DNA from: Eukaryota sp. TZLM1-RC
Lineage: Eukaryota; Protista; Metamonada: BaSk clade
Direction of reading: 5' to 3'
DNA: 64,000 nucleotides
NCBI GenBank assembly: GCA_040285825.1
Contig: JAUPSS010000003.1
Span: 2,728,001 to 2,792,000, forward strand
How positions within the stretch are numbered: position 1 is the stretch's first letter; each line of letters starts with the position of its first letter. This document shows, piece after piece, positions 6,432-57,404 of the stretch. Position numbers and translations under genes: made by a program. Under the pieces are notes generated by a model, which was not told where the DNA came from, searched no databases, and was given only the letters and a program-made list of their open reading frames with translations.

Positions 6432-8102
6432 ATGGCAGTCATCACTCCCTATTCAGGAGAAGATGATCCACGAACCCAGGGGTGGACAAAGAACCGTTAC
6501 TTCATCCTTTTATGTGGTTTTGTGCTACAAGTGAACATCGGTATGCGTTGATCAGCTCTTGTTAATCTTTGGCACACTATATGGCTTAAGTGTTTTCTCT
6601 ACACCTATCAGAGAGCTTTATCCTCATTGGCGCGGAAATGTGTCGTTTGCCTATAGTGTTGGAGTAGCTGGTATGGGATTTCTTTGTCCCTTTGCTGGTC
6701 AACTTTTAGATAAGAAGGGACCTCGATGGACTGGTCGGCTAAGTTCTATTTTATTCTTGTTGGCTCATGTTTTATCAGGTCTATTCGTTAAGTTCGATGT
6801 AAAACATGCATTTTGGCTCTCCTACGGTATCATCGGTGGTCCAGCATTCGCTCTTGGGTACGATGATTTTCTTCATCTCATTTCAGCTATTGTACACCCG
6901 TAGCTCCCGTGATACAGTGGTTTCCTGAACTCAGAGGCTTTGCTGGGGGATTAGTCCTGGCAGGTTTTGGTATGGGATCTATGAAGATGGGTATACTAGT
7001 TGTACGTTTAATTGAGTTATTCGGCCCTGGACTTGCACTCATCACACTAGGAATTTATGGGGGATGCTTCATTTTCAGTACATCCTATTTTATATGTAAG
7101 CCACCTCCAGGATACTACCCTAAAAATGCCTCCACCAAACTTCAACAATCTGTAGCCTCAGAAAACAGCATTAATCTTGGCAAAGCTCTGAAATCTTTCA
7201 CTTATTGGAAAGTGTGGTTCACTATTCTTGGAACTACTTTTGCTGGTGTATCTCTTATCTCCTTGTCATCTCCTATTTTAGAGGATGTATTCTCATTAAC
7301 TGAAGTTCAGGCAGGGAGATATCTCGCCATTTTCAGTACCGTTGATATGTCTAGTCGTTTTTTCTATTCGATCCTTAGTGATGTTTTTGCCCGCTACAAT
7401 TTGTGCAGAAAATGGTTGTACATTTGGCTTTTAACTAGTCAGTTCATTGTTTGTCTATTTATGACATCAATTATGACCAACCAACTCCTGGGTCTTTACA
7501 TTGTTAGTGCCTCTGTGCTCGTCAGCGGTCTGTCTGGTGGTCTCGGCTCTCTTCCTGGTTTTCTCTCTGAAATGTTTGGTTCAAAGTCTCTTTCTTCATT
7601 GTTTGGAATGACCTTAGCAGCCTGGGCTACCAGTGGATTGGTAGGTTCTCAGATACTTGCTGCAGTTCAAGCCCATGGCCAAGATACAGGAGTGGAAGAC
7701 CATTTGGTGTATATCCCATTTTTCAAGTACATTCCAATTCTTATAGCCATTTGTTTGGTTGCTGCTTTAACGTTACGTCCTTATAAGTTTGCAAAAGAAA
7801 CTGTTCTTCCCACTAGTGCAGATAATGAGGATGGTTCTGAAAATCAAGAAGAGGAATCAAAAAAAGCACCTGATGATGAATTAGTTGAGAACGGACATGC
7901 GATTGAGATGGTGGAAGTAGTGAATTTACCTGCTAATGACAATGTTGACAGTGATTCACAAGATGTGGAAGGTGATGATTCCACGGAGAATGATAATGTT
8001 GAAACAATTGAACAGATTGATCAAGATCAATCAATTCCAACTGATCACTCTGAGGAAGATTCTTGTGCTGTGTCTGACATTGACATTGTTGTTGAGGATT
8101 AA
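6432..8102 (+). CDS. MFS transporter, OFA/OxlT (oxalate:formate antiporter)-like, with acidic C-terminal tail; 2 introns
   Basis: Exons 6432-6540, 6572-6857, 6887-8102 join to 536 aa (…LQVNIGTLYGLSVF…GQLLDKKGPR…LGYCTPVAPVIQWFPELRG…). Introns 6541-6571 (GT-TG) and 6858-6886 (GT-AG). Confidence 0.85.
6541..6571 (+). other. 31-nt intron with non-canonical GT-TG boundaries
   Basis: GTATGC donor, and TTAAT branch-like motif with A at 6565 followed by exactly 6 nt (TCTTTG). Removal restores frame and TM1. Retention reaches TGA, and the internal AG at 6554-6555 is out of frame. Confidence 0.75.
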
Positions 8103-8792
8103 GTAGATCATGTTTAGTCAATTTTAACACGTGTAATTTATTTTGCAATTTTAGATGACACTTTAATGTAGTTAATACAGTAATTTATTTTTCATAGTTA
8201 TCATATCACTCTGATAAGTTTGTCCTTTATGAGACACTTGAGCCAGGGTGATAGCTTGTCAAAGCCTAACCCTAACCAGTGTCATGTGGTCTTTATCATC
8301 TCTAGTATTTGTGTAGTTTTTTGTTATATACATAATAATAAAAACAATAATAAATGTTATGCCACTAAATAACCAAAATTTACCAGAACTTAATATGTTC
8401 ATTTATTATATTAAAAATGATTACTTTAATTAAAACCATGTGGACAAATACCATTGCTGATTGCAAGTTTTGGAAATCAGCTGTTTGCAGTATCATAAAT
8501 GCTTCATTTCAGTTCAGTTGGGACCTAGCAAAATATTGAAGGTTTCAAAATTCAATTTACGTGTCACCATTACGACGATGGGCTGCTCGTGTGGTACATC
8601 TTGTTGAGAGTCAGTACTTTGGGGTACTGTCATTCATTGCTCATTTCAAATAAACTCCTACAGAACATCCACTGAGAAAGTAAGTTATTCAATGCTGACT
8701 GCTGCATATTGCTTTAATTACGGGGTGTTGAGTCTGATCGAGCAAAAACACAGGGACATAAAGCGTTTATGGTGCAACATCTACATAGCTAT

Positions 8793-10108
8793 CTAATAGT
8801 ATTTACCCTTCTTCCAGTCCTTCTTGTTATTCTTCTTGTCATTATCATTATCGTAGTCATCGTCATCGTCATCAGTTTCTTCAAGAAGGTGTTCATATCG
8901 CTTGTAGCAGATGCGCTCGTATTTCTTTACACAAAGATTCATGCACATGTCCATGCGTTCCTCGTGATCATTCTCCGTTTCGGTTTCGGATTCAGTGTAT
9001 CGGTCTTTGCAACACTTATACTTTTTGCAGCAGTTACGACTACGACAGCATCGGCGGTATTCTTCCTCATCTTCGTCATCATCATCAGAATCGCTATAGT
9101 GCCTGCGTCTCCTGTCACGACGTTTACGATCACGCTTATTATAGAATTCATAATCGTTATCCTCATCTTCTTCATCATCGTCTTCTTCCTTGATCATTCG
9201 TTTACATTTGCGGTAGCATTTGCCGCTATACTTGGCAATACAGCGCTCAATCTTCTTTTCTGCTTCTTCCTTTTCATCTTTCTCATCTTCTTCTTCACGC
9301 TTTTTCCTTTCTCTTGTACCAGCCGCATTCTTCATCATAGATCCATTCAGGACACTCTTTGCGGGGACAAAGAGTTTCGCAGTCAAGGTCGCCTTGCTTG
9401 AAAGAAATGGTCTTTGGTGGTGCCTCAGCTTCTTCCATTTTGTTACAATGAATCCAGAGCTCACGGAGTTCGTTCATCTTTTGGAAGCCTTTTGGAAGCT
9501 TTCCTTCGAGTAAGTTACAATGAGCACGGAAAGTTTTGAGGGATTTGGTAAAACGTTCATCAAAACACTTGGGGATCTCGCCATGGAAGTCGTTATTGTT
9601 GAGGTAAAGGTATTGGAGGGAGAGATAGAGTTCACAGAAACCTTCAGGGATTTTTGCCATTAAACTTGTTGTTAGAAAGATCAACGTGCTTCAAGGCCAT
9701 CAAGCAGCTTATTCCTTCTACGATGAGTTGGGTTCAGAAACATACCACCTTGGCCATCAGGGATCTTTCCTTTAAGCTTGTTCTTTTGCAGGTACAAGGT
9801 TTGGAGCCTTGGGAAACATGCAAATTCTCGGGGAAGCTTTCCTTGGAGGTTGTTGTCTTGAAGGTCAATCACAGTGACAGAACCATCAACACATTCGATT
9901 CCATGCCACTTACAATGGTCCTTTTCCTTCATATCCCACTAAAGTTAGGTGATAAGGAGACACAAACTTTCTTGGTCCATGATTCACCATGAAGTTCTTC
10001 GTGAAGTTTGAGGAGGGCCTCTTTTTCCGTTGGTGGACAGAAGTGACCACAAGCAAACGTCAGAGCGACTATAGTTGAGAGTATTAGTAATTTGTACATG
10101 AGAAACAT
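8793..10108 (-). CDS. Secreted plant-type LRR protein with Cys-rich and Asp/Glu/Lys/Arg-rich C-terminus; 2 introns and two apparent +1 frameshifts
   Basis: Signal peptide MYKLLILSTIVALTFA, LRR N-cap (EKEALL…W…HCKWHGIEC) and LxxLxLxxNxLxGxIP repeats. Introns 9939-9967 and 9718-9745 (GT-AG). One extra A in A5 runs at 9651-9655 and 9301-9305. Confidence 0.7.
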
Positions 10109-10744: not shown

Positions 10745-11035
10745 GCATCACTCCTTTTGCTTTTTCTTTATTTGGAACCTTGGGTAAAATTGCGTTAACT
10801 TTTTTGGACGATTTCTCATCTGTTGTTAAAATTAGAACTGGAAGAATATTTGACCGAACCTTTTGGCAAAACAGAATTGTATTTTCTATTTTTAAGAGAA
10901 TGTATAGCCTTGTTTCTAGCTCGTTGTGGTCACTAGGAAGATTTTATGAAGAAAATGCTGTAGGTAAGTTTTCAATAGTAGATGTGGAGTTTGAGGAGAT
11001 TGATTTTTAGTTTTTTACAATTTTGTTTGAATAAA
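10745..11035 (+). mobile_element. 3' fragment of RLE non-LTR retrotransposon
   Basis: PFAFSLFG…FLDDF…RTGRIF…FWQNRIVFSIFK…EEIDF* is homologous to the C-terminus of the 43031 ORF. Confidence 0.75.
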
Positions 11036-17160: not shown

Positions 17161-17892
17161 GCGATCTTTAGATCTTTGCCCTTGAATTCAATTCACCATA
17201 AGTACAACAGGTCTTTCATAGAATAAGATAAAACAGGCGAGAAAACAAGCATATCATTATTGTGTGGAAGAATCTTGGTTGAAGGAATTTCGTCCCATTT
17301 GTTCTATGTCTCAATTTCTGAGCTTTCTTCAGTTTATTGAGTGTTGTAGCTCAATAAGATTAAACAATACTCGCCCAAATGCTACTGAATTCATTATTAA
17401 TGAAATTCAATATATATATACTATTTGCGTAATGGAACTCCTGATTTTGGAAATCAGGTGATCTCAAGGCTCTTTATCAGCTCCCAGGTGCCTCCATAAT
17501 GGGCTCTATTCTGTATGAGTTCTTATGTGGAGCCTGCAATGAAGATATTGCTAACTTTAGTTAACAAAAAGAAGAAAACATAGACACATTGAATCAGCTT
17601 GGGTTCAATAAGATGTTTAATCTGAGAAGTTCTCATAAATCATTTTTTCTATAAATTGTTACATAGATACCTTTTGAATTGCAAATAAACCAGAATTCAG
17701 AGGATCTATTTGCACAATTATACAGACAGTTTACCTTTTTTTAACTGATTGAATTCCAAGAATAGTCACGTTCTTACTTTGACATTTCAAATCTAGCCAC
17801 TTTGATTCTGTGGGCTTTTCAACGGTCACAATTTTTGTAATTTTCTCCTTTTTAATTTACCAATTTCAATTCATTTTTCCTCCTCATAAGCT

Positions 17893-19597
17893 ATGGTTGC
17901 CTCCCAGCGTTACATTTGTACTATTGATTCCGGCACCACCTCCAACCGGTGCATTCTTTTCGACACTGATGACCTCTCCATCAAAGCCATTCACCAAATT
18001 GAACATCGTCAAATCTATCGTCAACCCGGCTGGGTAGAACATGACCCTAAAGAAATCATCGCCAACGTAAAGCTCTGCATTAACCAAGCTGTCTCCCAGC
18101 TTTATTCTACCGTTCCTGCCTCAAAACCATCAGAAGAAGTCATTGCCATTGGTGTCACTAACCAAAGGGAAACACTTGTTGTTTGGGATTCATCTACTGG
18201 CGAACCTCTCTACAACGCTATTGTTTGGCTAGACACCAGAACTAAGGACTGTGTAGACCAACTGGTGACTAAGCTTGGTGGCGTAAGGGCTCTTTCGGAT
18301 CAAACGGGCCTTCCCTTATCTACTTATTTTTCTGGTGTGAAACTTCGTTGGCTACTTGACAATGTACCAGCTGTGGCTGAGGCTTCTGCGAAGAAAACAC
18401 TGTTATGGGGAACTATTGACTCTTGGATTTTATACTCCCTGAGTAGGGAAAGAGTACATGTTACGGATGTGAGTAACGCGTCGAGAACTCTTTTGTTTAA
18501 TATTAAATCATTAGAGTGGGATAAACAATTGTTTGATGCTTTGGATATTCCTTTTACCGGCTATCCAGAGGTTAAACTTTCCTGTTCTGAGAGCTATGGA
18601 ACAATGGATCAGGGACCTCTAGCTGATGTTCCTTTCTGTTCTATTCTGGGGGATCAGCAGAGTGCACTTTGTGGACAAGGAGGTGTTTCTCCGAGCTCTA
18701 CCAAAGTAACTTATGGTATGTTTATTGTATTTTAAATTTCACCGCATGAACTGGGGCTTTTTTGCTCAAGAACACCGGAAGTGTACCCATATCTAGCTCG
18801 CATGGTTTGGTTACCACTATTGGTTATCAGTTCAAGTCCAATGAAGTCATTTACTGTCTAGAAGGTTTGGTCTTGTATTAATTACCACTAACAATCAGGA
18901 AGTATAGCTGTTGCTGGCTCTGCCATTCAGTTTTGTCGGGATAATCTTTGTCTCTTTTCTGATGTATCAGAGGTTGAACCTCTAGCTCGTTCTGTTGATG
19001 AAGCCGAATGTGTATGTTCTCTGCAAGTCTTCTTCCTCACATTAGGTCTTTGTTCCGGCTTTCAGTGGTTTATTCTGTCCTGTATGTTCTCTCTTTTTCA
19101 TTCCCTTCTTACCCCAGCATTGGGATCAAACTGCCAGAGGTACCATTGTTGGGATGAGCCAATATACGACAAAAGCGCATATTGTTAGATCTGTCCTCTC
19201 TTCTGTCGCTCATCAAGTATGTGACGTTATTTACGCCATGAATGAAGACACAGCGCATGTCAAGGGATTGAAGGAGCTTTCAGATCTCAAAATTGATGGT
19301 GGAATGACTTCAAATACTCTTTTATGTGAAACACAAGCTTCCCTTCTCAACTGTCCTGTCTACGTTTCCCGTGTTGCAGCTCCCGGAGGAGAGCAAAAGT
19401 CTGAAGCTACTGCATTGGGAGCTGCACTTGCTGCTGGAGTTGGTATTGGGTTTTGGGATAGTATTGAAGAAGCAGTAGAGCATCAACAGAGACATGCAAA
19501 TGTTTTGCAATACATGCCGGTCTTGGAGGAGGAGAAGAGATTGGCTGCAATAAAGAGATGGAATAAGGCCTTGGACAAGGCTAGAGGTTGGATTTAA
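17893..19597 (+). CDS. glpK: Glycerol kinase (FGGY family); 4 introns
   Basis: Exons 17893-18715, 18748-18864, 18899-19011, 19046-19081, 19118-19597 join to 522 aa with IDSGTTS, GWVEHDP, GVTNQRET, TDVSNASRT, GDQQSAL, TYGTGAFLL, LEGSIAVAGS, FVPAFSGL and DGG. Introns 18716-18747 (GT-AT), and 18865-18898, 19012-19045, 19082-19117 (GT-AG). Confidence 0.95.
18716..18747 (+). other. 32-nt intron with non-canonical GT-AT boundaries
   Basis: GTATGT donor, and TTCAC branch-like motif with A at 18741 followed by exactly 6 nt (CCGCAT). Removal yields the conserved TYG|TGAF. Retention stops at 18733-18735, and the next AGs (18770, 18781) are out of frame. Confidence 0.8.
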
Positions 19598-20309: not shown

Positions 20310-21390
20310 TTATTTTTATTTTCAACGCTAACAAAACATTAAAAAAAGCTAGAACTCAATATCCTCAATACACGCATCAACATCATCAAATCTCTTAAGC
20401 GCGCGATTTTCATACTCTATTCCTAATTTTAACAGTGCTTTGGTCAGCATTTCTGAAATTGCTTTAAGAATACTGAAAACAATTCGGTTGTGCCCAAAAT
20501 TGAAGTTCAATACTTTTCTGCTCTTTCTTTTATTAAACTTCTGAAACCTTCGAGAAATTTAATGCCAGATATTCCAATGTTACCAAAAAAAGAAACAGCA
20601 AATAGAACCATCTAGTACTTTACATACTCAACACGTTCTAGCTGAGATAAAACTTCATTGTATTTTTTGATTTTGCACTTTTCAGCAAAGCAAAATGGAG
20701 TTTCATCTTTTTTAGCAAAAGCAATTGCTGAGTCTTTACAAACATCAACAGTGACAACATCAACAACTTTGATCACACCATCAGACCCAGGGGTAATTAA
20801 ATCAGCACGGCGTTTCCCAAAAGTATTTTCGTCTTCATTTTCAGATGACAACATTCGCACAAGTGGTTCAACAAAAGCTTCAATGTGATGACTTTTGCAC
20901 ATAGCATATAGTTGGTCTCTAACAGCATCGTGAACAACTGAGCGATATGTAATATTAAATTTGCAATTAAATACATGATTCAGATTGATGAGCTGACCAC
21001 AACGACAAATCAAACCATTTGGCACACTGCATGGCTACAAAAAGCACCTCATTCTTAAGGCAGTTGTCCATTGATGGTCATTTGATAATAAACCACAAAC
21101 ATATGGAATTTGGGAAATGAGACAATTTGAGCTACTTTTTTTAAGATCAATTAAACAATCAGCAAAAACGGGATTCTTTTCCTTAGCCAAGCTAAGACGT
21201 ACAGTAAAATTCTAGTTTTCAAAAACTTTTAGATCTTACAGGAAATCAAACTTCTGGTTGGAATTTCTTGATTATCGGCAGGAAATCACTTGGACTATAT
21301 TTGTGGAGAGAGGCATTCGATTTCTTTCTGTAAAGACACCAAATAATCACTTACACAACATTCTATTAGATGTTGGTTTTCAGGAAAACA
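20310..21390 (-). mobile_element. Decayed RLE non-LTR retrotransposon, family B (Zn knuckle + endonuclease)
   Basis: LICRCGQLINLNHVFNC, HDAVRDQL and RRADLITP. Near-identical to 4765-5340, with stops and frameshifts. Confidence 0.85.
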
Positions 21391-21484
21391 AGGATCAACA
21401 GACATTACATCCAATAAAATGAAGGTTCCATCCAATCCAGGTAATATGACATCACCTCTATTGTTCTTATGAAAAGCATCTTCA
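21388..21484 (-). mobile_element. About 100-bp fragment of non-LTR family A
   Basis: FHKNNRGDVILPGLDGTFILLDVMSVDPC matches 43425-43515. Confidence 0.75.
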
Positions 21485-25082: not shown

Positions 25083-27330
25083 TTACCTGGAAAGCTCATT
25101 AAAAGCAGAAACCCAATCATCCCGCTTTCCTTCACCTTCACAACAAAATCTCAACACACACTCAGAGCCATTCACTATCCACGTAAACAAACCCTCTGAG
25201 CAACCCTCTGCTTGGGCAGAACACCCAAAGAGAGGGAAAGTGGTGGTTTCAGGTGAAAGACAGGTTGAATTGGAATGGGAAATGATTAAGGTTTGATTGT
25301 TGAGCGTAATAAATCGTTTATTCCAAATCCCATCAGAAGATAATATGAACACCCAGCCAGATTTATCAACGAATGACACGTCATCGGATGTCATTTGATT
25401 GTCGATTTGATTGGGGGAAGCAGCAACGAGTTCTTGGTTATGTGAAAAAGCCACGTTTTGGATACACCCCATCCATTTTTGCAAAAGTGCGGGTGTCGAA
25501 GCTGACAGAACAACACGTGGCAGTGACGTGTCAACTGACGAGAAGAGCTCGAAACAATTGGACCTTCCCTCATCCATAACATTTACAATCCTCACATCAG
25601 GGGTAATTGGTATCGAATTCTGAGGTACTGAATCCTTTTCATTATGATAATACGAAAGCAATCTACTCGCAGAGTCTAAGACAAACCACCTCTCCTTCCA
25701 CTTGCACTTTGAGGTTTTTTTAAACAACCACCCTTGAATTTCTATTTTTTGATGGGTTAATTCCACTTTTTTTTTCTTCGTAAACCAATTACTGACCAAG
25801 GATCTCCTTTTTCTACTAAACATGGACTGACTAGCTATAGGTTCACTTAATTGAACAGAGGAAACAGTAACTGCTTGCGGATTGACACTAGGTTGATTAG
25901 TATTTGAATTAGACAATTTATCTTCCAATTCAGTCACTTTTTTGGTTTTGGTTTGTAATGTCTTCATTAAAGCTGATAATAATTCACTATGTTGGCTTTT
26001 TTCTAAATGCAGACGATCTAGAACCTCCTTGCAGTTACTACAAGGGGAATCGGAAGTTGATTGGGGATGATTGACTGGGATTTCTGACCCGGTCAAGAAC
26101 TGATCAAATAAACTTTCCCATGCTGGATTGATGACAGTCAAGAACTCCCTCAACAAGGAAACCTCCAACGCCTTTTCCTCTACTTCATTTTTTAAGAGCA
26201 CTATTTGCTTATTCAAATCATCAATCGAATCAACCTTGTTGACCCTCACGAAATTGGAAACTCTCGACACTCGTGACGCGAACTGTAGAGTCGATACCGT
26301 CTCTTGTAGATCTTCCCTATCTAACGAAACATTACAGTAGACCAAGCAGTTACTGTTGCCCCCCAATGAATCCCGCAACGTCATTGTAAGTTTTGACTCT
26401 CTGTAAGGTATGTGTGGAGTTTGATCAACAATGGCTCGGATGACGTTACCCAAGGTCGATAACGACAGGTTGATCTTCTTTGCTTCCTCCAATCTTGCTC
26501 CTTCACATTCAGTCCGTGAAACACGTTCAGAGCCAGCCAAATCTGCCACATTTAACCTAGATGAAAGAGTGAAGACTCCAGTCGAAGAAGAGATTTTTTG
26601 AATAATGTTTATTATGGCGAGGACGTGTGATCGTGAGGAAGTCTTATTCATTCTGGTCGTAGCAGTTGATCTATTGGAGAGTCCGGAAGAAAGCAAAGAG
26701 ATGAGACTGGAAGAGGAGTCGACGAGATGTGTCGAGAGGTTCTGGACGAAGATACCCTAGAGTGAGTCATGTGCAAAACTGCCAAACCTTAACCACGTCT
26801 TCTCTTATGGCTAGAGGCTCACCATCGTGTAAGAGGTCCTGAAGAGATTCTTTGTATATCTGGAGAAGGGAGACAGAGACGGTAGTGTTGGATGAAGGGT
26901 TTGAATCAATTGTAGAGAAGATTTGTTCAGCTGCACGGGGGAGGATGCCTTTAAGGTCAGGATCAGTTAGAGCGCCGCCAGAAAGAATGGTATGGGTTTT
27001 ACCACTGCCAGTCAGGCCATAAGCAAAGACAGTAGCGTTTATGCCAGTGAAAACAAGATCAACTAATGACTCAACTGGAGTGTAAACATCTGCTTGTGTA
27101 GCTGAAGGTAGAAAGATGCCGTCCAGAGAGGTTTGGTGCAGAATTTTAGAAGAATTTTTAATAATGACAGTATGTGGATATTGGTTGGAATCAGGATCTA
27201 CTTGACCTTCGGAGTTGAAGAATTCTATTGCTGTATCATCAAGTGTAGATGAAGGTATACAGTTTTCAAATGCTGCAAGTTGACTGCGTGGGGGACGCAC
27301 ACGAAGAAAGACCTTGACTGTAGATTCCAT
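25083..27330 (-). CDS. Kinesin motor protein with coiled coil and two C-terminal PH domains; 1 intron
   Basis: VKVFLRVRP, P-loop AYGLTGSGKT, SSRSH, DLAGSE and HIPYRESKLT. PH1 IQGWLFKK…WKERWFVL…W; PH2 KSGWV…WNKRF…WVSAF. Intron 26757-26787 (GT-AG). About 738 aa. Confidence 0.9.
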
Positions 27331-27453: not shown

Positions 27454-27884
27454 ATGCCCTCTCTGCTTCTACAGATTGTTCTGTTTCTTCATGCATGGTC
27501 TTTACCCCTCTTTATCTTAATTTTTGGAGGTTCTATCTTCTATAAGCTGTACTACTTACCATCTATACCTGGTTGCTCTTCTGGTGCCTTCCCGTTGCTT
27601 GTCTACATTGTTTCTGAACTTTCTCGACTCTATTTTGCTTCTAGAGGCCATCGTAACTCCACTCCTGGCCCTCTACTCGCCGGACTTATCCTGAGCTCTG
27701 GTCCCCTGCTTATAATGTGGTACGTTCGGAGCTTTCAGTGCTTTGTGTATGTTTACCAGACCCCACTCACTCCAGTCTAAAGGTTGAGGATTACTCATCG
27801 TTAGTGATTATGGTTGCCGTGCTGATAGAAGTAATTCTCTTGATACTAGCTTATCTCAAGGTTCAAAAGGCTAAAAAGATTTGA
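27454..27884 (+). CDS. TMEM17/TMEM216-like ciliary transition-zone membrane protein; 1 intron
   Basis: SLLLQIVLF…K…LP…ELSRLYFASRGH…QCFV|LKVE, 4 TM segments, 133 aa after removing intron 27747-27775 (GT-AG). Head-to-head with the kinesin gene, 123 bp apart. Confidence 0.7.
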
Positions 27885-42940: not shown

Positions 42941-43000
42941 AATTTACATTCTTTATTTATAATTATTTATATATTTTAATTTTAATTACAAATTATGTTG

Positions 43001-46000
43001 TTTTTTTTTAAATTTAATTTTATTCTAAACCTATAAATCAACATCTAAAAAATCCATCTCTCCCAAAACAAAAACACTAGATGCAACTCTCTCATAGTGA
43101 GATCCAAGAGAAAGCAAAGCATCAGAAACCATCTTCAACATCCCCTTAAAAATAGAAAACACAATTCTATTTTGCCAAAACAATCTGTGGAAATTTCTGC
43201 CAGTTCTTCTCTTTACAATCATTTCAAAATCATCCAAAAAACGTAAAGCAGTTGGTGCAAGTGAACCAAAAAGGGAAAATACAAATGGATACAAATTGTA
43301 TTTTGCATGCTGTAGACTGGCCAATTTGGACAAAGGTTCATTGTATTTTTTGAATTTAAAATTTTCAGCATTTGAAAGGGGATTATGAATTTCAGAATTA
43401 ACAAGCCTTTCATTTGAGGCATTACAAGGATCAACAGACATTACATCCAATAAAATGAAACTTCCATCTAATCCAGGTAATATAACATCACCTCTATTGT
43501 TCTTATGAAAATCATCAGTATCAAACAGATTTGACAACAAAGGTTCCAAGAAGGATTCAATTCTATGAGATTTACACATACAATATAACTGGTCTCTTAC
43601 AGCATCATGAACCTTGCTTCTAAAAGTAATAAAATGTTTACAATTTAACAAATGAGTAGTTGTAATTTCTCGAGAACATTTACAAATTAAATTATGAGGT
43701 AAATTATCAGGCCAGATAAAGGAACGAAATCTCATATTCAGAGTCCAAGCAGAATCGGATAAGAGAGTACCATAAACTTGTGGAATTGTTGTTACTAAGG
43801 CAGAAGAAGTACTGTCACACATATCTTGTAAAAGATTTGCAAAAGCGGGATTCTTTTTCTTGGCCAAGCCAAGTCTAACATCAAAATCCAAGCTTTCAAA
43901 AATCTTTGACAATTTTTGTTGAAGCTTTTTACAGCAAAACTGTAAATTAAATAGAGATCGGTTTGGAATTTCTTGAATTGATTGAGGAAAACAATTGGTC
44001 CAAATTTGTGGCGGTAATTTTTCAAGTTCACAAGATAACTCATACAAATAGGGACTACAATTGGGGACTAACAGATGAGAATCATCAGGAAATCTACGAG
44101 AAAATTCATAAATAAAATTTTGCCACCACCCAAGAATGCTGATTGACACAAAATTGAAGATTTAGTAAAACCAATACCACCCAAATTTGCTGAAGAAAAT
44201 AAATGGCTTTTCAACATTCCTGGTTCTACATCCAATAAATCAGCAAAAAATTCTGTTCTCAATGAATTGAAAGAACGACAAAAATCTAATGCTATGGAAG
44301 GAGCACAAGATCTCAAAATGTGGGTTATTCTCCCAGTGTAGCAAATTTTAAGCATGAAAAATTTAATATGCTTTTCTATATCTAAAGAAGAAATTGAATC
44401 AAGTTCAATTTTCATTTTTTCCAAAATAACTTGCAATTCATTCTGAATTTGAGGCACATTTCCTAACCAACAACCAAGGAACTTAAAAGCATCACTACTA
44501 TAATTAGTAAAAGGGACAATAGAATCGTTTATCACGAGGTCTTGAGCAGAAGAGCCAATCAGAAGACATTTGCTGGCATTAAGATGAAGCCCAATATTTT
44601 CATATGAATCGGCAATTTCTTGAGCAACCAATTCTAGTAAATCAAATGAACCAATCAAGGATATATCATCCATATAAGCAACTATTTTTATAGAAGGGTA
44701 TTTTTGCTTAATGATATTTAAAGTTTTGTGAATAGCTAAACAAAACAATAATGGGCCTAAAGGATCTCCCTGCTTCACTCCAGAAGATGATTTAAGACCA
44801 AATGAATTAAAAATTAAATCTGATTCTTTCCCATAAAAATGGTAGAAAAAAACTCGATAGCTCAGGAAAATCAGATTTAATAACTTCAAAAATTGCTTCT
44901 CGCTTTACAGAATTAAAAGCATTTTTAAAGTCGAGATTAAAAATAAAATTATTTTTCTCTGCATTAAAAAAGGTATCAGAGGCAATAGCAGCAACAGAAG
45001 CACCATCAATTGTTTTGATTCCAAATTGATGAGGATTCAAAAATGTAGAAGCTTTGTCTTTGACACGATCGAAGACAATTGATGCTAGCAAACGAGAAAG
45101 AGATTCACCAACAGCAATTGGGCGTATTCCATCAGGTTTGATTCCGTTTCCAGGCTTTACTAAAGCAATCAGACGTGCTGCGAGTAATTCAAATGGAGGA
45201 TTAATTTTCAAAACAATCAATTGTTGAAAATAGTGGGCTAGATCATCAGCAATTTCGGGAGCACTGGAACACGCTATTTTTAACAGATCAAAAGAAATTC
45301 CAGATGGGCCTGCTGCTTTCCCCTTTGGCAATTTTTGAATAGCTTTAAGAACTTCCATTGCAGTAATAGGATTTTCAATCCAAAAAGGACACACTTCAGG
45401 CTTGCTGCACTTGAAATTTTCTTGAGGATGCAACTTTTGAAGTTTTTCAAGGGTATCAGAGTTTGCATCAGCCAAAGAAGAGGAAAACAAAGACTGCTTT
45501 GCGGCACCATAACGACCACGTAAGCACAATTTACGGCAAATTTTTGATTTTACAATTTTTCTATTTCCAAATTTTTTCTTAAAACAATTTTTGTTTTTTC
45601 TAGCAAAATATTTCCAGAAGGATGAAATATTCCACTTATTATTTTTCAATTCAGAAGTAAAATTTCTCATTTCCATTGAGAAGGGGATTGTGCTGGCGGG
45701 ACTTATTTCTACTGGGATCCGGATCGGGGGTCTTACGGTATCAACGGCTTTTACAATTCGTACAAAACAGAAGTTTTCGACCATTTCGTGAATCTGCAAC
45801 ATCTTTTTTGCAAAATGGACAACAAAAATTACTGTTTTCAGAAGGGGAAGAAGAGGGAACACTAGAAGCATTTAACTGTTGATCGTCAGAAACATTATTT
45901 TCAGCACCTTTCACAACGGCAACAGCTGGAACAGAACATTTGAGAATTTGTTGAGCAGATTTTAATTCAAATTCTCTTTTTGTTTCTCAGGGCACGTTCT

Positions 46001-46480
46001 CGAATTATGACCACTGATACCACAAATCGAACATTTTTTTAGAACCTTTTAATGGCAGTGGTTTCATTTTTTTCAGTTCTTTCAATTTTGTCAATTTTTG
46101 AGTTAAAAGTAGAAATAGACTTTTGACTTTTTGCAGTTTCAGCTGGAGAAAACAAATTTCGAGAAACGGAGTTGTTAATAGAACGCGCAACAGAACGCAA
46201 GGAACGTAATGGTGGTTTTTCTGTGTTTTTTCTGGTACAATGATCAGTTTTTGAATGAAAATTTTTTTGAGATGAATTTCGAGCATAGCTTGTATTGTGG
46301 GGAGAGTGGGGAAGTGGAGTGGATGAGCTTGATCTGACTGGTAGAATCTTTGCTTGGGCGTTCCAATCAGTATCAGAGTCACTATCAGCCAAAGGCATCG
46401 TTTTGACAGAGAAACAGTACGACTTTGACGCCTTGACAGAAAGTGAAATATGAAAGGGTTGACTAAGGGAGGGAGAAAAA
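43001..46480 (-). mobile_element. CRE-like RLE non-LTR retrotransposon with both ends, family A (frameshifted)
   Basis: One interrupted ORF from 46398 to 43031: N-terminal CCHC knuckle, RT (GIRPIAVGE, LDFKNAFN, GVKQGDPLGPLLF, AYMDD), CKC-x7-H-x3-C finger, and RLE (RGD…LLDV…K..KY). Short 3'UTR and A9 tail (43001-43009). Flanked by direct repeat AAATTATGTTG(TT) at 42990-43000 and 46481-46491. Confidence 0.92.
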
Positions 46481-46554
46481 AAATTATGTTGTTCAAAGTG
46501 TTATTAAATTCATATTTTATGGGTTCATAATTTTCAGGAACGTTTAAATTCATA

Positions 46555-46628
46555 GTTTCTGTGGTCTAGTTGGTTAGGATATCTGTCTAACACACAGATG
46601 GTCCCGAGTTCGAGTCTCGGCGGAAACA
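46555..46628 (+). tRNA. tRNA-Val(AAC)
   Basis: Cloverleaf with acceptor GTTTCTG/CGGAAAC, anticodon stem TCTGT/ACAGA, anticodon AAC at 46589-46591, T arm CCGAG-TTCGAGT-CTCGG, and T5 terminator immediately downstream. Confidence 0.95.
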
Positions 46629-46699
46629 GTTTTTGAAATTTTGCGAGACAATGGACAGATTTCCTATTTATTTATTTATTTGCAATTTAGGTTTTCAGT

Positions 46700-47885
46700 T
46701 GCTATCCTGGAATGCTCAATCCCATACTCTTTGTGTCCTTTGTCCATTTGCTTTTTCCTTACATGACACGCTTGAAACCACTTGCTTTATCTTTCTTGGA
46801 TTATTTTGTTGAAATAGTAAAAGAACGTACAGGAAGAATTTTTGACAAAATTTGTTGGCACAACAGAATTGTATTTTTCATTTTTAAGGGTGTTGTTGTG
46901 CTGTTTCCTTCTTATTTTCTGCTTTATTATCTCTTGGTCGTCTTTATAAAAGAAAAACATTCAGTCAATTCTATTTGACTGACTTGGGATATGAAGATTT
47001 AGATTTTTAAGTTTGAGGATTAGTTTTTGGGTCGAATAATTTAAAAATACCAAAAAATAGTTTGCAGTTTAACTGTAAAAAGCTTCAGCAAAATTTGTCA
47101 AAGTAATTGTTTTAGTAACAACCATTCCTCAAGTCTATGGCACTCTTTTAGCTAATTTTGCCTAGACTTTCAATATGAGACTTCCGATATTAAGCCTGGT
47201 AATTTGCCTCATAATTAAATTTGTAAATTTAATCGATAAATTACAATTACTCATTGGTTAAATTGTAACCATTCTACTACCTTTAGAAGCAATGTTCATG
47301 ATGGTGTAAGAGACCAATTATTTTGTATGTGCAAGACTCATAGAATTTAATGTTTTTTATAACTTTGTTGTCAAATATGTTTGATGCTGAACATAATGTT
47401 CATAAAAATAGTAGAGGTGATGTCATATTACCTGCATTAGATGCAACCTTCATTTTAGTAGATGTATTGTCCATTGGTCCTTGTAATGTCTCAAATGAAA
47501 GGCTGGCTATCTGTGAAATTCATAATCTTCTTTCTAATGCTAAAAATTCCAAAATCAAATAATACAATGAACCGTTGTCCAAATTGTCCAGCCAACAGCA
47601 TGCAAAATAAAATTTGTATCCATTTGTATTTTCTTTGTTTGGTTCACTTGCTCCCACGGCTATTCGTTTTTTGACAGACTTTAAAATGATTGTAAAGAAA
47701 AGGATTTGATAGAAATTTTAACAGACTGTTTTGGAAAATAGAAATGTATTTTCTATTCATAAGGGAATGTTGAAGATGGTTTCAGATGCTTTGCCTTCAC
47801 TTGGATCTCACTCTGAAAGAGTTGCATCTAATTGTTTTGTTTAGGGAGAGATGGATTATTTAGAGGTTGATTTAAAAGTTGCTTA
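46700..47885 (+). mobile_element. Two tandem decayed 3' fragments of RLE non-LTR elements (second is family A)
   Basis: FLDYF…RTGRIFD…WHNRIVF at 46790-46890, and HKNSRGDVILP…PFVFSLFGSLAPTA at 47350-47880. Confidence 0.8.
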
Positions 47886-48184
47886 GTAAATAAATGTTGC
47901 TTAAACAAAGTAAATTCTAAATTTTAGTATTATTTCTGCTACTGAACTTTCAGATCTTAGGACTTTGTTATCTTTGTGTAGTTACACTCACTTCTGATTC
48001 CTTATTTTCTGATTAGTTTAATTTTTTGTTCTGCCGCTAAAGGTTAAAACTGCAGAAATCACATCTTAGTTGCTAAAATTGAAACAAATGTCACAATTAT
48101 CACTCTGCACTTTCAACTAAACAGATTTTGTAATAACAACACAGAATAAAGGAGATGATTAGATGCAACTTTAAAAACTAGTTT

Positions 48185-48265
48185 TGTTGCATTAGGTTGC
48201 AAAAGTGGTTGAGATAAAGATAATTTATTTTTTATTCATATTAGAAAAGCCTAAGGGCGCAAACA
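48185..48265 (-). repeat. 3' LTR (81 bp)
   Basis: TGTTGC…AAACA, with 5 substitutions versus 55114-55194. Confidence 0.9.
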
Positions 48266-48378
48266 CTGCTTCTTCCCCGTTTTCAAAGATAATATGCTTA
48301 TATAAATATGAATTAAACTATAAACCAATAACTAAATAACTACAAATAATCTAAACTAATCTAAACTAAGAATTGGCA

Positions 48379-51300
48379 TCACTTCCGAATTCTAGTACTG
48401 CGTCTAGGCCTCTTGTAAGGCGTAGAGTTATTGGAGGTACTTTTACGTTGACTAGTAGTACGTTTACCAATTTTCTTGTTATTCCTACTGAACAACTTGT
48501 AAGCTTCTGAATGTTTAACTGAATGGAGAGGCTTTTCTGTTGTCTCACCGCCAAACCATTGAACAGTACAGAAACTACCTGAGTCAGAATTATTTTCTGA
48601 GAGGATTTTCTCTATAACATGTTTCTCATCATCGCCTGCTGCGACTGCCTTAAGAAATTCGATATCCTGTGGATTCTCAGCGTTATAGATTTTGCAATCT
48701 TTCTTAGCAGCCTTTAATTCGGTGCCAGTGATAAGATTTTTCAATAATAAAGTAGAGTTGGAATGACGGTCTATTACTAAAAAGGGTCTGTTCCAAGATC
48801 CATGTAATTTATTATTCTGTTTGGTTTTACGTAGGACATAGTCACCAATATTAAATACTATAGAGCGCGAATTAGTATTGTCTACTGAAATCGGAGTATT
48901 TGATAATTGATGACGCTCTGCTTCTTCCCTTTTTTCTTGCAGACGAGTATTTTTCATTTTAATGTCGTCTAATAAAGGTATATTGGAATCAAATTTTGAT
49001 AAGTTTCCTAATATGTTTGCAGGGTCCGATCTTGGACTAATCGAAGATCCGAACATTAGTTCGTAAGGTGTAAAACCTGTCTTTCTGCTTTTAGTGGAAT
49101 TTATTAATAGTTGGGATATGGGTACATAAGTAGACCAATTTCCATAATCATTAAAATCTATTGATAATTTCCTCAAGCATTGTAGAACGTCTCTATGTTT
49201 TCGCTCTACGAGTCCATTACTTTCAGAGTAGTGGGGTATTGAGTTACTCATCTCAATAGCTAATCTATTACACACTATCTTAAAAGTCTCATAGGCGAAC
49301 TCAGGACCATTATCACTATGAATTAACATAGGTATGCCAAAAATTGCGCAAACGTTCCAAATCAAAGCGTCTGCGGTCTCTAAGGCATTGAGTTCCTTCA
49401 GAGGGACTAAAATTGAATATCCAGTAAAAGAATCTACAAATACTAATAAGTATATATTACCATCATTATCAGTATTCAGAGGTCCAATTGTGTCGACATT
49501 TAATCTAGCAAAAGGACGATCTGCCCAAAGGGTACCTGTGGAAGGTGTTTTTATTCTTTTAACTGGTGCCGTTTTTTGACAAGTTGGGCATCTTTTGATG
49601 TGGTTTATGAGGTCCTTTCTCATATTAGGCCAGCAAAAGTCGCTTTTGGACAGTTGATGTAGACTGTCGTTTTTGCTGGGGTGGCCTGATTGAACCAATC
49701 CATGTATTAATAGTAGGGCCTGTTTTCTGAGGCTTTTTGGAATTAAAATTTTATATTTATTGTTTTTCCAAATTTGAGTATTTTCATCTAGAATTGCATT
49801 CTCAAATAGAGGGTCATTATTATTTTTTGCTATTTGTTGTTCAGATCTTATTTTAGAGAACCAAGAAGAAAAAATAGGTAAGTCCTGGTGTCTACTTAGG
49901 GATGAAATTGATGGGATGTCTTCGAAGTCCGAATCAGAATCATCGTCTATTGGAGGTATCTCGTAATTCGAAAGTAAAGTATCTGGTATATTTATACTAC
50001 ATATAGAAGGAGTTTTCTCGTTTTGATCTAAATCAATATTCCTTGATAGCATATCTGCCAAGTGGTTATCTTCACCTGGTTCATGGACTATATCAAAACC
50101 GAATTCAGATAGTGTCGGCAGCCATCTCTTTACAATTCTGTTTTTCTCTAGGGCTGTGGCCAGGAATGCAATATTTTTGTGATCATTGAAAATTGTTAGA
50201 TGTCTAGTCAAAAGGTAGCTTTCTAAACAACTTTCAGTTAAAATCAGAAGTATTGCGTATAATTCCTTTTGTAAGGTGGACCATTTTGATTGTGTTTCTG
50301 TAAGTAATCTACTATAGAATGACAAAGGTTGCACTTTCCTTTTATTTAGCGGGGTTCCTGCAGGGGAGTAGGGTTCAATTTCTTGCCAAATTACACCTCC
50401 TACTGCTACATCTGAAGCGTCAGTACTTATTAATACTCGCTTGCCCGGAGCTGGTAATTCAAGAGGCATGTGGTTTACTATTAAATCTTTGATTTGTTTA
50501 AGATACTCGTCATGCACATTGGTCCATTTGATAGTTCTAGGTTTTCCTTTTATTAACTCGTTAATTGGAGCTATTAATTCAGAAATTCCAGTAAGCCAAT
50601 CTCTTATGTAATTAATTGATCCAACCCAGGAGCGAACCTCTTTCAATGTTTTTGGTCTGGGTATTCTCATAAGGGCTTCTATTTTTTTCTTGCTGATGAA
50701 CCTAGTTTTGTTCTGGAAGGTACTTCCTAATATGTCAATGGGGTGTTTGGCTGTGACGAATTTGCATTTTCGTAAACCAATGTTGACCCGTCTTTTCCTG
50801 GCGCATTCGAGGACTCTTTGTAGTTGTTTGCAGAATTCATCAAATGAAGAACCGACTATTATAATGTCGTCTATGTATATGAAAACGCCGTCTATTGAAA
50901 AATTTCCATCATTACATTTTGAAATACTGCTGGGATATTCTTTAAACCGAAGCAGGCTCTTTTGAACATAATGGACCTTCCAGGTATTGAAATTGATGTT
51001 TTTTCAATACCCTTTTTTGCTACATTCATTTGCCAGAAAGCTTTTGGTAAATCAAGCGTGGCAATGTAGTCAGCTCTGCTCAAAAATTCTAATATGTCAC
51101 TAATCCGCGGTAAATTTGGTTCGACAGAAATTGTATGGGCATTAACACCGTCTGTACCACTAAAGTCGCCAGTTAATCTAGGTTAATCTAGGTCATCTGG
51201 GTAGATAACTAGGACAATAGGAGAGCTGAATCTATAATTGGATTCAACTGCATAACCCATTTCTATCAATTCGTCGAATATTTTGTTGGCTATTTCTAGA

Positions 51301-54925: not shown

Positions 54926-55113
54926 CTATTCTATTCCTACTGATGTTGTATGTATGCTAAAATCATCTCTGTCGTACTGTTGCATGAAAATTTGACAAGG
55001 GTCAGTGTCCTGGCTAGGAGACACTGACATGATATCTGCTAAAGATATCCTCTGTTTGATAGCTGTAAGTTGTGTGAGTGGTATACCTATAACCTAATAC
55101 AAACAATTATTAT

Positions 55114-55194
55114 TGTTGCCTTAGGTTGCAAAAGTGGTTGAGATAAAGATAATTTATTTTCTATTCATATTATAAAAGCCTAAAGGCGCCAACA
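55114..55194 (-). repeat. 5' LTR (81 bp)
   Basis: TGTTG…CAACA terminal inverted pentamer; direct repeat of 48185-48265. Confidence 0.9.
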
Positions 55195-55847
55195 GTTTGT
55201 TGAACTTTGCAGAAATTTCTTCACCTCAAAGTGCAACAATGTTTAAAGGTTTTTTGGGAACAACTGAAATTTGGAACAAATTTATAACAGTCAACAACAA
55301 GGATAACCATTCAGTTACATGCTGGAGCAAAGACGTCCTTGGAACAGTGGTTGCAATACTCAAAAAATCAAGCATAATATGGTTCATTGTAAACAAATTG
55401 AAAATTTTGATCCCAACAGAAAATCAGAAAGTGTCATCCAAAAAGGATTATTGGAAAATTGTGGGTAACATTACAGGTAAACAATCAGGGCAGGTTTCAT
55501 CAATAGTAACAAAAGCTCAACAAGTTTCCAAGTTATTGCTGTTTGTACACTAGGGATTATCTTCGTGCATATGTTGCACTACTTGGTAGTACGAAATTCG
55601 TACTGTTATGTCATAGATTATGTGTTGTTCTACATAAACAGCTACAGAAGAATTCGCAACAATTGAAATCTAGATTTCTGTATCAGTGCTTAAATTCAAG
55701 CACACAATGCCTTCCTGATTAGTCCCTTGAGGGAGGCACTTACTGAATTGTTTGGCTCAAATTACGAAATCTTTCTCGAGAAGTCAAATTGCTTTGTGAA
55801 GAGGAACAAGTTCATTCAATTGGATATTTTCTGTAGTGTCTTGAACT

Positions 55848-57404
55848 ATGACCATCTCCACACCAGAAGTCAACCAGGCTATTGTCAACAAAGCTGTTAA
55901 CCGTTTCCGTGAACGTGACATTCTCTTGCCCACCTTCGACCAACTTCGTAATCCTGAATTGATCCCTCAATCTGTCAAGGATGAATTGAAGAAGATTGAT
56001 CCTCAAGCTATCCACCCTCTCAATCTCTTCAGAATCACTTGGAAGAATGATGTTGAAACTAACATGTTTGGTGAAATCAATCATGTCGAAATTCCATCAT
56101 GTATTAGTGGTGTTAAAACCAAAATCTTCTTGCTTGTCGGAAAGTATTTCCCTTCAGGAAGTCACAAAATTGGTACGTAGCCATTTAAGTCTAACCAAAG
56201 GTGCCGCTTACGGTCCTCTTGTATCCAGAGTAACTACTGGTACTTTTGATCCTGAAACCCAAGCAGCCTTATGGCCATCCACGGGTAACTATTGTCGTGG
56301 TGGTGCTGCTCTTTCTAAAATGATGGATTGTAAAGCTATTGCTGTTTTACCAGAAGAAATGTCTCCTGAACGTTTCAATTGGCTCAAAGATATTGGTGCT
56401 ACAATTTACGCCACCCCGGGCTGTGAATCCAACGTCCGTGAAATTTTTGAAAAGACAGAAGAGTTGGTCAGTGAGGGTAAAGGCGATGTTGTTGCATTCA
56501 ATCAATTCAATGATCTCAGCAATCCTCTCTTCCAGTATGTTCGTTATCCACATTAACCATAGTTATTACTGTACTGGTGACGCAATTCGTGAGGTTTATG
56601 AAGGTCTTGATGATCCTAACCTCCGTTTGAGTGGTGCTTTCTTTACCACAGGATCTGCTGGAACAATTGCAGCTGGCGATTATCTTAAGGAGAAATACCC
56701 TACTCTCAAACTTGCTGCTGGTGAAGCACTTCAATGTACCACTTTGCTCAACAACGGTTTTGGTGGTCACCGTATCGAAGGAATTGGTGATAAGCATGTG
56801 TATGTTTCATATTTAGATGACTAATTTTAGTCCATGGGTCCACAACGTTCGTAACACTGATATGGCTGTCGCAATTGATGATGAAGATGCCTATAGAGTA
56901 TTGCGTCTCTTCAACACTAAGGAAGGCCAGGACTTCTTAGTTTCTCAAGGAGTTGAGCCCAAGGTTGTCAACCAACTCTCTCTTTTAGGTGTTTCCTCCA
57001 TCGCCAACCTTATTGGTTGTATTAAGATGGCCAAATACTATGAAATGGATGAAAATGACTGTCTGTTCACTGTTGCCACTGACTCTGCTGTCATGTACAA
57101 GTCCCGTGTTGAATCCGAACAAGAAAAGTATGGTGATATGACTGTTGCCGAAGCCATGTCTATCTTGAAGAGCAATTTGCACGGAATCAAGATTGATTAT
57201 GTTGAGGAGCTCACTCATTACGGAAAGAAGAGAATCCACAACCTCAAGTACTACACCTGGATTGAACAAAGAGGAATGGAGCAAGAAGAACTTGAAAGAC
57301 AATGGTATGATCGTCAGTACTTCTATGATCATTGGCATTTAGTCGATTTTTATAACAAGAAGATTGTTGAATTCAACAAGGCAACTGGTCTTTACAAGGA
57401 GTAG
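55848..57404 (+). CDS. Bacterial-type fold-II PLP-dependent enzyme (PALP / tryptophan synthase beta superfamily); 3 introns
   Basis: Exons 55848-56172, 56201-56534, 56563-56799, 56831-57404 join to 489 aa. PLP lysine in GSHKIGAA, plus WPSTGNYCRGG, TGSAGT, HRIEGIGDKHVPWVHN and RIHNLKYYTWIEQ. Introns 56173-56200, 56535-56562, 56800-56830 (GT-AG). Confidence 0.88.

What the first reader, a model, noticed from the sequence alone, without database searches (positions are those of the whole stretch)
6541..56830. Tiny introns with a fixed branch-A-to-3'-end spacing: candidate ruler-type 3' splice-site selection
Seen: 13 introns reconstructed from protein motifs in 6 genes are all 28-36 nt and start GT(A/T)(T/C)G. 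They are 6541-6571, 6858-6886, 9718-9745, 9939-9967, 18716-18747, 18865-18898, 19012-19045, 19082-19117, 26757-26787, 27747-27775, 56173-56200, 56535-56562 and 56800-56830. Twelve end YTNAY-NNNNN, i.e. a branch-like A followed by exactly 6 nt (CTCAT-TTCAG, CTAAC-TTTAG, CTTAC-CCCAG, CTAAC-CAAAG etc.). The exception, 18865-18898, has 7 nt. There is no room for a polypyrimidine tract after the branch site. Established: fused branch/3' splice sites at a fixed distance occur in Giardia and Trichomonas, there with a much stricter sequence (ACTAACACACAG-like). Inference: here the sequence is degenerate but the distance is rigid, which would explain why two introns tolerate non-AG ends.
Basis: partly seen in the sequence, partly recalled or inferred. 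Interest (0 to 1): 0.85.

Follow-up and report, generated by a model that had tools for sequence, protein, structure and literature searches.

The report
Tiny introns with anchored branch site
The soda-lake flagellate Skoliomonas litria has 26-36-base introns whose branch-like A sits 6 bases (rarely 7) from the intron end, even in introns ending in AT or TG, which extends a rule known from Giardia and Trichomonas to a looser form that needs RNA proof.

Summary
Observation confirmed. The window is Skoliomonas litria TZLM1-RC (GCA_040285825.1, contig JAUPSS010000003.1).

- All 13 introns lie at the stated coordinates. Seven are fixed to the nucleotide by homology. The other six are the only, or the favoured, GT..AG placement that gives the annotated product length.
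- Twelve have YTNAY with its A 6 nt from the intron end, and one has 7 nt.
- I added 8 introns from a paralogue and from two sister species. Of the 21 in total, the spacing is 6 nt in 19 and 7 nt in 2, while the distance from the 5' splice site to the A varies from 19 to 31 nt.
- Four introns do not end in AG (three AT, one TG), and all four keep the 6-nt spacing.
- In a sister species' H3-like gene, the spacing rule gives a better gene model than the public GT-AG model.

Interpretation partly supported. Distance-limited choice of the 3' splice site fits the data, but AG is still preferred. No RNA or lariat data could be checked.

This is not a new kind of system. A branch site fused to the 3' splice site at a fixed 7 nt is established in Giardia and Trichomonas, and moving the branch motif abolished splicing in Trichomonas. 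The new elements here are the 6-nt spacing, the degenerate motif and the roughly one in five non-AG ends.

This scan has already flagged the same rule in other windows of this genome.

The parts
6541..6571 (+). MFS transporter intron 1. 31 nt, GTATGC..TTAAT-CTTTG, ends TG, A followed by 6 nt, phase 1.
   Evidence: Homologues read ..INIG|TLYG.. with no gap across the junction. No AG is available nearby. The public gene model starts at 6887 and so does not include this intron.
6858..6886 (+). MFS intron 2. 29 nt, GTACGA..CTCAT-TTCAG, A followed by 6 nt.
   Evidence: The junction ..ALG|YCTPV.. aligns with homologues without gaps. The public model begins at 6887, which is this intron's end plus 1.
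9718..9745 (-). LRR gene intron 2. 28 nt, GTATGT..CTCAT-CGTAG, A followed by 6 nt.
   Evidence: Gene 9644-10099, 132 aa, leaves 57 nt of intron, which equals 28+29. The frame is open. This is the only GT..AG placement.
9939..9967 (-). LRR gene intron 1. 29 nt, GTTTGT..CTAAC-TTTAG, A followed by 6 nt.
18716..18747 (+). Glycerol kinase intron 1. 32 nt, GTATGT..TTCAC-CGCAT, a GT-AT intron, A followed by 6 nt, phase 1.
   Evidence: The spliced model equals public protein P0160. The conserved TYGTG motif spans the junction.
18865..18898 (+). Glycerol kinase intron 2. 34 nt, GTTTGG..CTAAC-AATCAG, A followed by 7 nt. This is the exception.
19012..19045 (+). Glycerol kinase intron 3. 34 nt, GTATGT..CTCAC-ATTAG, A followed by 6 nt.
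19082..19117 (+). Glycerol kinase intron 4. 36 nt, GTATGT..CTTAC-CCCAG, A followed by 6 nt. It is the only intron whose length is a multiple of 3.
26757..26787 (-). Kinesin (PH-domain) intron. 31 nt, GTTTGG..CTCAC-TCTAG, A followed by 6 nt, phase 0.
   Evidence: Gene 25083-27330, 738 aa, leaves 31 nt. The exons abut in the Pfam Kinesin profile. Only GT..AG placement.
27747..27775 (+). TMEM17 intron. 29 nt, GTATGT..CTCAC-TCCAG, A followed by 6 nt.
   Evidence: Gene 27454-27884, 133 aa, leaves 29 nt.
56173..56200 (+). PALP-enzyme intron 1. 28 nt, GTACGT..CTAAC-CAAAG, A followed by 6 nt.
   Evidence: Gene 55848-57404, 489 aa, leaves 87 nt, which equals 28+28+31.
56535..56562 (+). PALP-enzyme intron 2. 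28 nt, GTATGT..TTAAC-CATAG, A followed by 6 nt.
   Evidence: The alternative placement 56434-56461 would cut a contiguous Pfam PALP match.
56800..56830 (+). PALP-enzyme intron 3. 31 nt, GTATGT..CTAAT-TTTAG, A followed by 6 nt.

Best explanation
These are ordinary U2-type spliceosomal introns of Skoliomonas litria, built on the metamonad plan in which the branch site is fused to the 3' splice site. The layout is an extended 5' site (GTATGT-like), a variable spacer of about 13-25 nt, a degenerate branch motif YT(A/C)AY, and then a fixed 5-nt tail.

Inferred mechanism. After the first catalytic step, only the phosphate 6 nt (occasionally 7 nt) downstream of the branch A can reach the catalytic centre, because the tether is so short and there is no room for a pyrimidine tract. 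The 3' cut is therefore set mainly by distance. A YAG at that position is preferred, and the spliceosome will take an AG at 7 nt. One-base departures (YAT, TTG) are tolerated.

Shown: the anatomy, its recurrence across genes, paralogues and species, and the fact that conserved proteins require these exact excisions. Inferred: that the A at -7 is the branch point, and that the introns not ending in AG are spliced efficiently.
For: - Of 21 validated introns, 19 have the A followed by 6 nt and 2 by 7 nt. The distance from the 5' splice site to the A ranges over 19-31 nt.
- Position table for the 15 S. litria introns: -10 is Y in 15/15, -9 is T in 14/15, -7 is A in 14/15, -6 is Y in 14/15, -2 is A in 14/15 and -1 is G in 13/15.
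- The pattern scan shows an excess only at the d=3 spacing.
- Paralogous MFS introns share site and phase and keep the 6-nt tail, while length (31 against 26 nt) and end dinucleotide (TG against AG; AG against AT) differ.
- GT-AT introns are part of the public proteins P0160 and P0004.
- RCL H3-like gene: the 32-nt GT-AT intron makes the exons map to H3 residues ..85 | 86 | 87.. with the split codon reading Gln. The annotated 41-nt GT-AG intron removes three residues.
- Precedent: a fixed 7-nt spacing in Giardia and Trichomonas, with splicing lost when the branch motif is moved 2 or 7 nt.
- GT-AT and GT-TG are the rare non-AG termini also recorded in animal U2- and U12-type introns.
Against: - No RNA-seq, cDNA or lariat data could be read, so the junctions rest on protein conservation and on the public models.
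- AG is still present in 17 of 21 introns.
- Both 7-nt cases end in AG, so nucleotide identity matters as well as distance.
- The sample is small (15 S. litria introns from about 85 kb).
- Three longer annotated introns in the window do not fit the rule. They may be annotation artefacts or a second intron class.
- The MFS copy whose intron ends in TG could be a very recent pseudogene, although its 536-codon frame is intact.
Confidence: 0.65

Rival explanations
1. The 3' end is one composite sequence signal (YTNAY-NNYAG) that is read as a unit, and AG is required as in Giardia. On this view the AT- and TG-ending introns are mutated sites that are spliced poorly or not at all, as leaky alleles or young pseudogenes. 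The spacing would then be part of a motif rather than a measuring device.
For: AG is the end in 17 of 21 introns, with a pyrimidine-rich -5..-3. Each non-AG end is one substitution away from YAG. The public MFS model stops short of the TG-ending intron. The one GT-AT type A intron reported in Giardia is spliced in only about 1.3% of reads.
Against: All four genes with non-AG introns have fully open, conserved frames. Two GT-AT introns sit in public protein models produced by an RNA-seq-guided pipeline. Four of 21 is too many for chance decay in essential-looking genes. Other windows of this genome were noted to hold more GT-AT introns (unchecked notes).
Confidence: 0.15
2. The conserved A at -7 is not the branch point. 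YTNAY-N5 would instead be a binding site for a 3' splice-site factor, and the lariat would form at another A further upstream.
For: The third motif position is C in 6 of 15 introns (CTCAC/CTCAT), which pairs badly with a canonical U2 GUAGUA (U2 pairing from established knowledge). Most introns have other A residues upstream.
Against: YTNAY is the general eukaryotic branch consensus. In related metamonads the CTAAC A at the equivalent place is accepted as the branch adenosine, and mutagenesis of the motif's position in Trichomonas supports this. No other conserved position exists upstream of the motif apart from the 5' splice site.
Confidence: 0.1
3. The constant tail is inherited rather than selected. 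The introns would be recent copies of one short source sequence, since they look lineage-specific, and would simply not have had time to accumulate indels in the 5-nt tail.
For: The GK, MFS and kinesin introns are absent from sister-species orthologues. Many introns share GTATGTT at the 5' end.
Against: The inner segments are no more alike than shuffled controls (mean longest shared run 3.60 against 3.46 +/- 0.09). The tail letters themselves differ between introns. Independent introns in three species obey the same spacing. Length differences between paralogous introns lie only upstream of the motif.
Confidence: 0.05

Closest known systems
Giardia lamblia and Trichomonas vaginalis type A introns (branch site fused to the 3' splice site, [A/G]CTAAC-ACACAG)
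   Same: Same supergroup (Metamonada). GTATGT(T)-type extended 5' site. No pyrimidine tract. Branch A at a fixed short distance from the intron end. Short introns of uniform size.
   Different: The spacing there is 7 nt after the A, against 6 nt here. Their 12-nt motif is nearly invariant, whereas here only YTNAY plus a preferred YAG is kept. Those genomes hold a handful to a few dozen introns, whereas this window alone has 13. Non-AG ends are not a regular feature there.
Trichomonas vaginalis type B introns (25-26 nt, TCTAAC-H1-2-AACAG)
   Same: Very short length, weaker 5' site conservation, and a branch A 7 or 8 nt from the end with a 1-nt tolerance.
   Different: Their branch motif and tail sequence are still strict. 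Their spacing is 7-8 nt rather than 6-7 nt. All of them end in AG.
Yarrowia lipolytica and other intron-poor yeasts with anchored branch-to-AG distance (Irimia and Roy 2008)
   Same: Convergent loss of the pyrimidine tract and anchoring of the branch motif a set number of bases from the AG.
   Different: Strict ACTAAC motif. Introns are long (median about 200 nt in Yarrowia). The preferred spacing differs. Unrelated lineage.
U12-type (minor) introns
   Same: [quoted passage not shown]
   Different: The defining 5' RTATCCTT and TCCTTAAC branch motifs are absent here. The 5' site here is U2-type GTATGT.

Membership tests
U2-type spliceosomal intron | Interrupts a coding frame, and exact removal restores a conserved protein | tested here: met
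   GK equals public protein P0160. The MFS, kinesin and GK junctions align with homologues or the Pfam profile without gaps. The other six introns fit the annotated product lengths.
U2-type spliceosomal intron | GT (or GC) at the 5' end with a GTRNGT-like extension | tested here: met
   GT in 21 of 21 introns. G at +5 in 15 of 15 S. litria introns. GTATGT in 8 of 15.
U2-type spliceosomal intron | AG at the 3' end | tested here: inconclusive
   AG in 17 of 21 introns. The other four end in AT (three) or TG (one).
U2-type spliceosomal intron | Removed from RNA through a lariat at the branch A | not testable with these tools
   No tool for RNA reads was available. The public annotation was RNA-seq guided.
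Giardia/Trichomonas type A fused branch and 3' splice-site intron | Branch A exactly 7 nt from the 3' splice site | tested here: not met
   6 nt in 19 of 21 introns and 7 nt in 2 of 21.
Giardia/Trichomonas type A fused branch and 3' splice-site intron | Near-invariant [A/G]CTAAC-ACA[C/Y]AG motif | tested here: not met
   CTAAC occurs in only 5 of the 15 S. litria introns. The tail letters vary.
Giardia/Trichomonas type A fused branch and 3' splice-site intron | Extended GTATGT(T) 5' splice site | tested here: met
   The consensus is GTATGTT. +3 is A in 12/15, +4 is T in 12/15, +6 is T in 10/15 and +7 is T in 9/15.
U12-type intron | 5' RTATCCTT and a TCCTTAAC branch motif 10-15 nt from the end | tested here: not met
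   None of the 21 sequences has either motif.

The most novel reading that the evidence does not exclude
The Skoliomonas spliceosome sets the 3' cut purely by counting 6 nt from the branch adenosine, so the terminal AG has become dispensable and about one intron in five naturally ends in AT or TG. This relaxed system would be operating during a recent burst of tiny-intron gain in S. litria. That would make the organism a natural model for asking what the AG actually contributes to the second catalytic step.
Probability: 0.4. Interest if true: 0.75.

Novelty: new variant of a known kind. Interest (0 to 1): 0.55.

Why it matters
- Lineage. If RNA data bear it out, Skoliomonas would carry the metamonad fused branch and 3' splice-site design into the BaSk clade, the free-living sister group of Fornicata, in a looser and more informative form. 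The distance is kept while the sequence, including the terminal AG, is allowed to drift.
- Mechanism. That pattern separates the contribution of distance from the contribution of AG identity in the second step of splicing. In other organisms this has needed mutagenesis.
- Annotation. Gene finders that insist on GT-AG truncate or distort models in these genomes. Examples are the MFS gene here, which is cut at 6887, and the H3-like gene of strain TZLM3-RCL, which loses three conserved residues.
- Literature. The genome paper says nothing about intron architecture, and I found no paper that describes it.

Tried and rejected
- Full enumeration of all intron sets compatible with each gene model. 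I replaced them with per-intron placement tests.
- Exact mapping of P0160 with any donor dinucleotide timed out. I replaced it with a direct equality test.
- An ORF-restoring scan for further non-AG introns in the window. The background was about 23-25 hits at every spacing, so it has no power for non-AG ends. AG ends were enriched only at 6 nt.
- Repeating the spacing profile on 131 kb of other Skoliomonas loci gave no signal. Introns are too few there and several have other 5' variants. Two earlier attempts failed on time or memory.
- Looking for orthologous introns to compare. The GK, MFS and kinesin orthologues in GEM-RC1 and RCL are intronless or have the intron elsewhere. Only the H3-like gene and the MFS paralogue gave intron pairs at the same site.
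- A kinesin family search to reach more S. litria loci returned no S. litria paralogues among the listed hits.
- An introner-like common origin was rejected.
- U12-type membership was rejected, because the motifs are absent.
- Three annotated long introns (161, 52 and 110 nt) could be neither confirmed nor refuted.
- The first look-up of the Brix gene with the second ATG failed. The annotators used the first ATG.
- The genome paper's supplements are not held as text.
Full report
**Source**

The window matches GCA_040285825.1, contig JAUPSS010000003.1, positions 2728001-2792000. Its proteins are labelled "Eukaryota sp. TZLM1-RC", the type strain of Skoliomonas litria. This is a free-living anaerobic metamonad of the BaSk clade, the sister group of Fornicata. 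The window is 36% G+C and compact. It holds Pol epsilon as a single 2155-codon frame, glycerol kinase (GK), a PH-domain kinesin, an MFS transporter, a Brix protein, a PALP enzyme, Ty3-like retroelement frames and two tRNAs.

- *Annotated lengths.* Public gene ranges and product lengths give the total intron length for each gene: kinesin 31, TMEM17 29, PALP 87 (28+28+31), LRR 57 (28+29) and GK 136 (32+34+34+36).
- *GK.* The spliced GK model is identical to the public protein P0160. GK homologues fix each junction: TYG|TG, LEG|SIA, EC|VFVP and FCP|HWD.
- *Kinesin.* The two exons abut in the Pfam profile.
Two GEM-RC1 homologues and an S. litria paralogue show that the gene continues upstream. A 536-codon frame runs from the ATG at 6432, and there is no gap within 10 residues of either junction.
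PALP intron 2 has one alternative, which would cut a contiguous Pfam match.

**The two non-AG ends are real features of the DNA and are required by the proteins**

- *Intron 18716-18747 (GT..AT).* It splits the glycerol-kinase TYGTG motif. Any excision other than these 32 nt, or the equivalent TA..TG shift, breaks the motif. The public protein already assumes this excision.
- *Intron 6541-6571 (GT..TG).* It joins ..VNIG to TLYG.., exactly as in the homologues. No AG lies downstream of the branch motif within reach.

**Extending the sample**

- *S. litria paralogue.* The paralogous MFS gene (L004) has introns at the same two sites and phases. One is 26 nt (CTAAC-TTAAG). The other is 29 nt, GTATGT..CTAAC-TTTAT, which is another GT-AT intron and is required by the public protein P0004.
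- *GEM-RC1.* I found CTCAC-ATCAG (28 nt), CTCAT-ATCAG (28 nt) and an H3-like gene intron with CTAAC-CTATAG, which has 7 nt after the A.
- *TZLM3-RCL.* I found CTAAT-CTCAG (33 nt), TTAAC-CTTAG (38 nt, exact mapping to P0281) and the H3-like intron.
- *The RCL H3-like intron is the most telling case.* The public model uses a 41-nt GT-AG intron. The spacing rule instead predicts a 32-nt GT-AT intron (TTAAC-CTTAT). With the 32-nt version, exon 1 maps to H3 up to residue 85 and exon 2 from residue 87 of the same solved chain. The split codon between them reads Gln, as in H3. The 41-nt version deletes three residues.
- *Totals.* There are 21 introns. The A is followed by 6 nt in 19 of them and by 7 nt in 2. 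The distance from the 5' site to the A varies from 19 to 31 nt, so all length variation lies upstream of the motif.
- *Paralogous pairs.* The MFS introns keep the tail while their length (31 against 26 nt) and their end dinucleotide change.

**What speaks against a pure ruler**

- AG remains the end in 17 of 21 introns, and -3 is mostly a pyrimidine.
- Both 7-nt introns end in AG. In the GEM-RC1 H3-like gene a cut at 6 nt would shift the frame, so an AG one base further along is taken in preference.
- The best reading is therefore a narrow reach of 6-7 nt, within which AG is preferred but not essential.
- Three longer introns implied by public models (161, 52 and 110 nt) lack the motif. One has a 13-nt first exon. 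One lies in an orphan gene that has an alternative start codon. One bridges overlapping retroelement frames. I could neither confirm nor dismiss them.

**Comparison with what is known**

- *Fixed spacing in intron-poor species.* Irimia and Roy (PMC2483917) described anchoring of the branch motif at a fixed distance from the AG in intron-poor species. The gap is 4 nt (ACAC) between CTAAC and AG in Trichomonas and Giardia, and 2 nt in Yarrowia.
- *Experimental support.* Hudson et al. (PMC6679479) summarise that moving the Trichomonas branch motif 2 or 7 nt upstream abolished splicing. Spironucleus has its own fused motif.
- *Short Trichomonas introns.* Wang et al. (PMC6260720) confirm the 7-nt rule for type A introns. 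They also describe 25-26-nt type B introns with a 7-8-nt spacing.
- *Non-AG ends elsewhere.* A 30-nt GT-AT type A intron, rarely spliced, is listed for Giardia (PMC10711314). GT-AT and GT-TG are also the rare non-AG ends recorded for animal U2- and U12-type introns (PMC1557818).
- *Verdict.* Skoliomonas is thus a new variant of a known design. It has 6 nt instead of 7, a degenerate YT(A/C)AY instead of ACTAAC, no conserved tail letters, more introns, and a high share of non-AG ends. The genome paper does not discuss introns, and I found no paper that does.

**A common-origin explanation is unlikely**

The GK (x4), MFS (x2) and kinesin introns are absent from the GEM-RC1 orthologues and, where checked, the RCL orthologues. 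Those orthologues are single-exon or carry an intron elsewhere. The introns therefore look lineage-specific. However, their inner segments are no more alike than shuffled sequence.

**Limits and housekeeping**

- *No RNA data.* No tool for RNA reads was available to me.
- *Spliced models.* Spliced models were searched exon by exon, by reference. Joined frames were built only inside local scripts, for frame, length and equality checks, and were not printed or sent to any search.
- *Earlier scan notes.* Notes on other windows of this genome state the same rule, and one follow-up reports AT-ending catalase introns. I treated them as leads only.

Noticed in passing
window 17893-19597, 6432-8102, 25083-27330; loci L005, L006, L007, L008, L009: The four GK introns, two MFS introns and one kinesin intron of S. 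litria are absent from the orthologues in strain GEM-RC1 (its sister) and, where checked, TZLM3-RCL. Those orthologues are single-exon, or in the case of RCL kinesin carry an intron at another site. By parsimony this points to recent intron gain in S. litria. The intron interiors show no shared source sequence.
   Followed up: partly
L009 21193-21842 (-): The public model of the TZLM3-RCL H3-like gene uses a 41-nt GT-AG intron (21360-21400) and so lacks three conserved residues. A 32-nt GT-AT intron (21369-21400) restores the H3 reading ..RFQS.. with contiguous coordinates in solved H3 chains.
   Followed up: yes
window 6432-8102 (+): The public MFS transporter model is truncated at its 5' end, at 6887. 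A complete 536-codon frame exists from the ATG at 6432 if the GT..TG intron 6541-6571 and the intron 6858-6886 are removed.
   Followed up: yes
window 5379-5539 (-), 54926-54977 (-), 44068-44177 (-): Three longer introns (161, 52 and 110 nt) are implied by public gene models and lack the YTNAY-N5 ending. The 110-nt one bridges two overlapping retroelement frames and may stand in for a frameshift site. The other two lie in orphan genes with doubtful start codons.
   Followed up: partly
window, all 13 introns, plus L004 10122-10147 and 10434-10462: Only 1 of the 15 S. litria introns has a length divisible by 3, against about 5 expected (binomial p of about 0.02). This resembles the bias against 3n lengths seen in other tiny-intron organisms, where a retained intron must break the frame.
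   Followed up: no
window 43031-50670 (-): Ty3/gypsy-like retroelement frames with reverse transcriptase, RNase H, an integrase zinc-binding domain and an integrase core. A tRNA-Val gene (46555-46628) lies between them.
   Followed up: no
window 8483-8512 (+), 17513-17560 (+): Two further matches to the full intron pattern (GTTTGC..TTCAT-TTCAG, 30 nt; GTATGA..CTAAC-TTTAG, 48 nt) lie outside annotated coding sequence. One follows the MFS stop codon and the other lies 330 nt before the GK start codon. They could be UTR introns or chance matches, since about 16 pattern hits per spacing are expected by chance.
   Followed up: no
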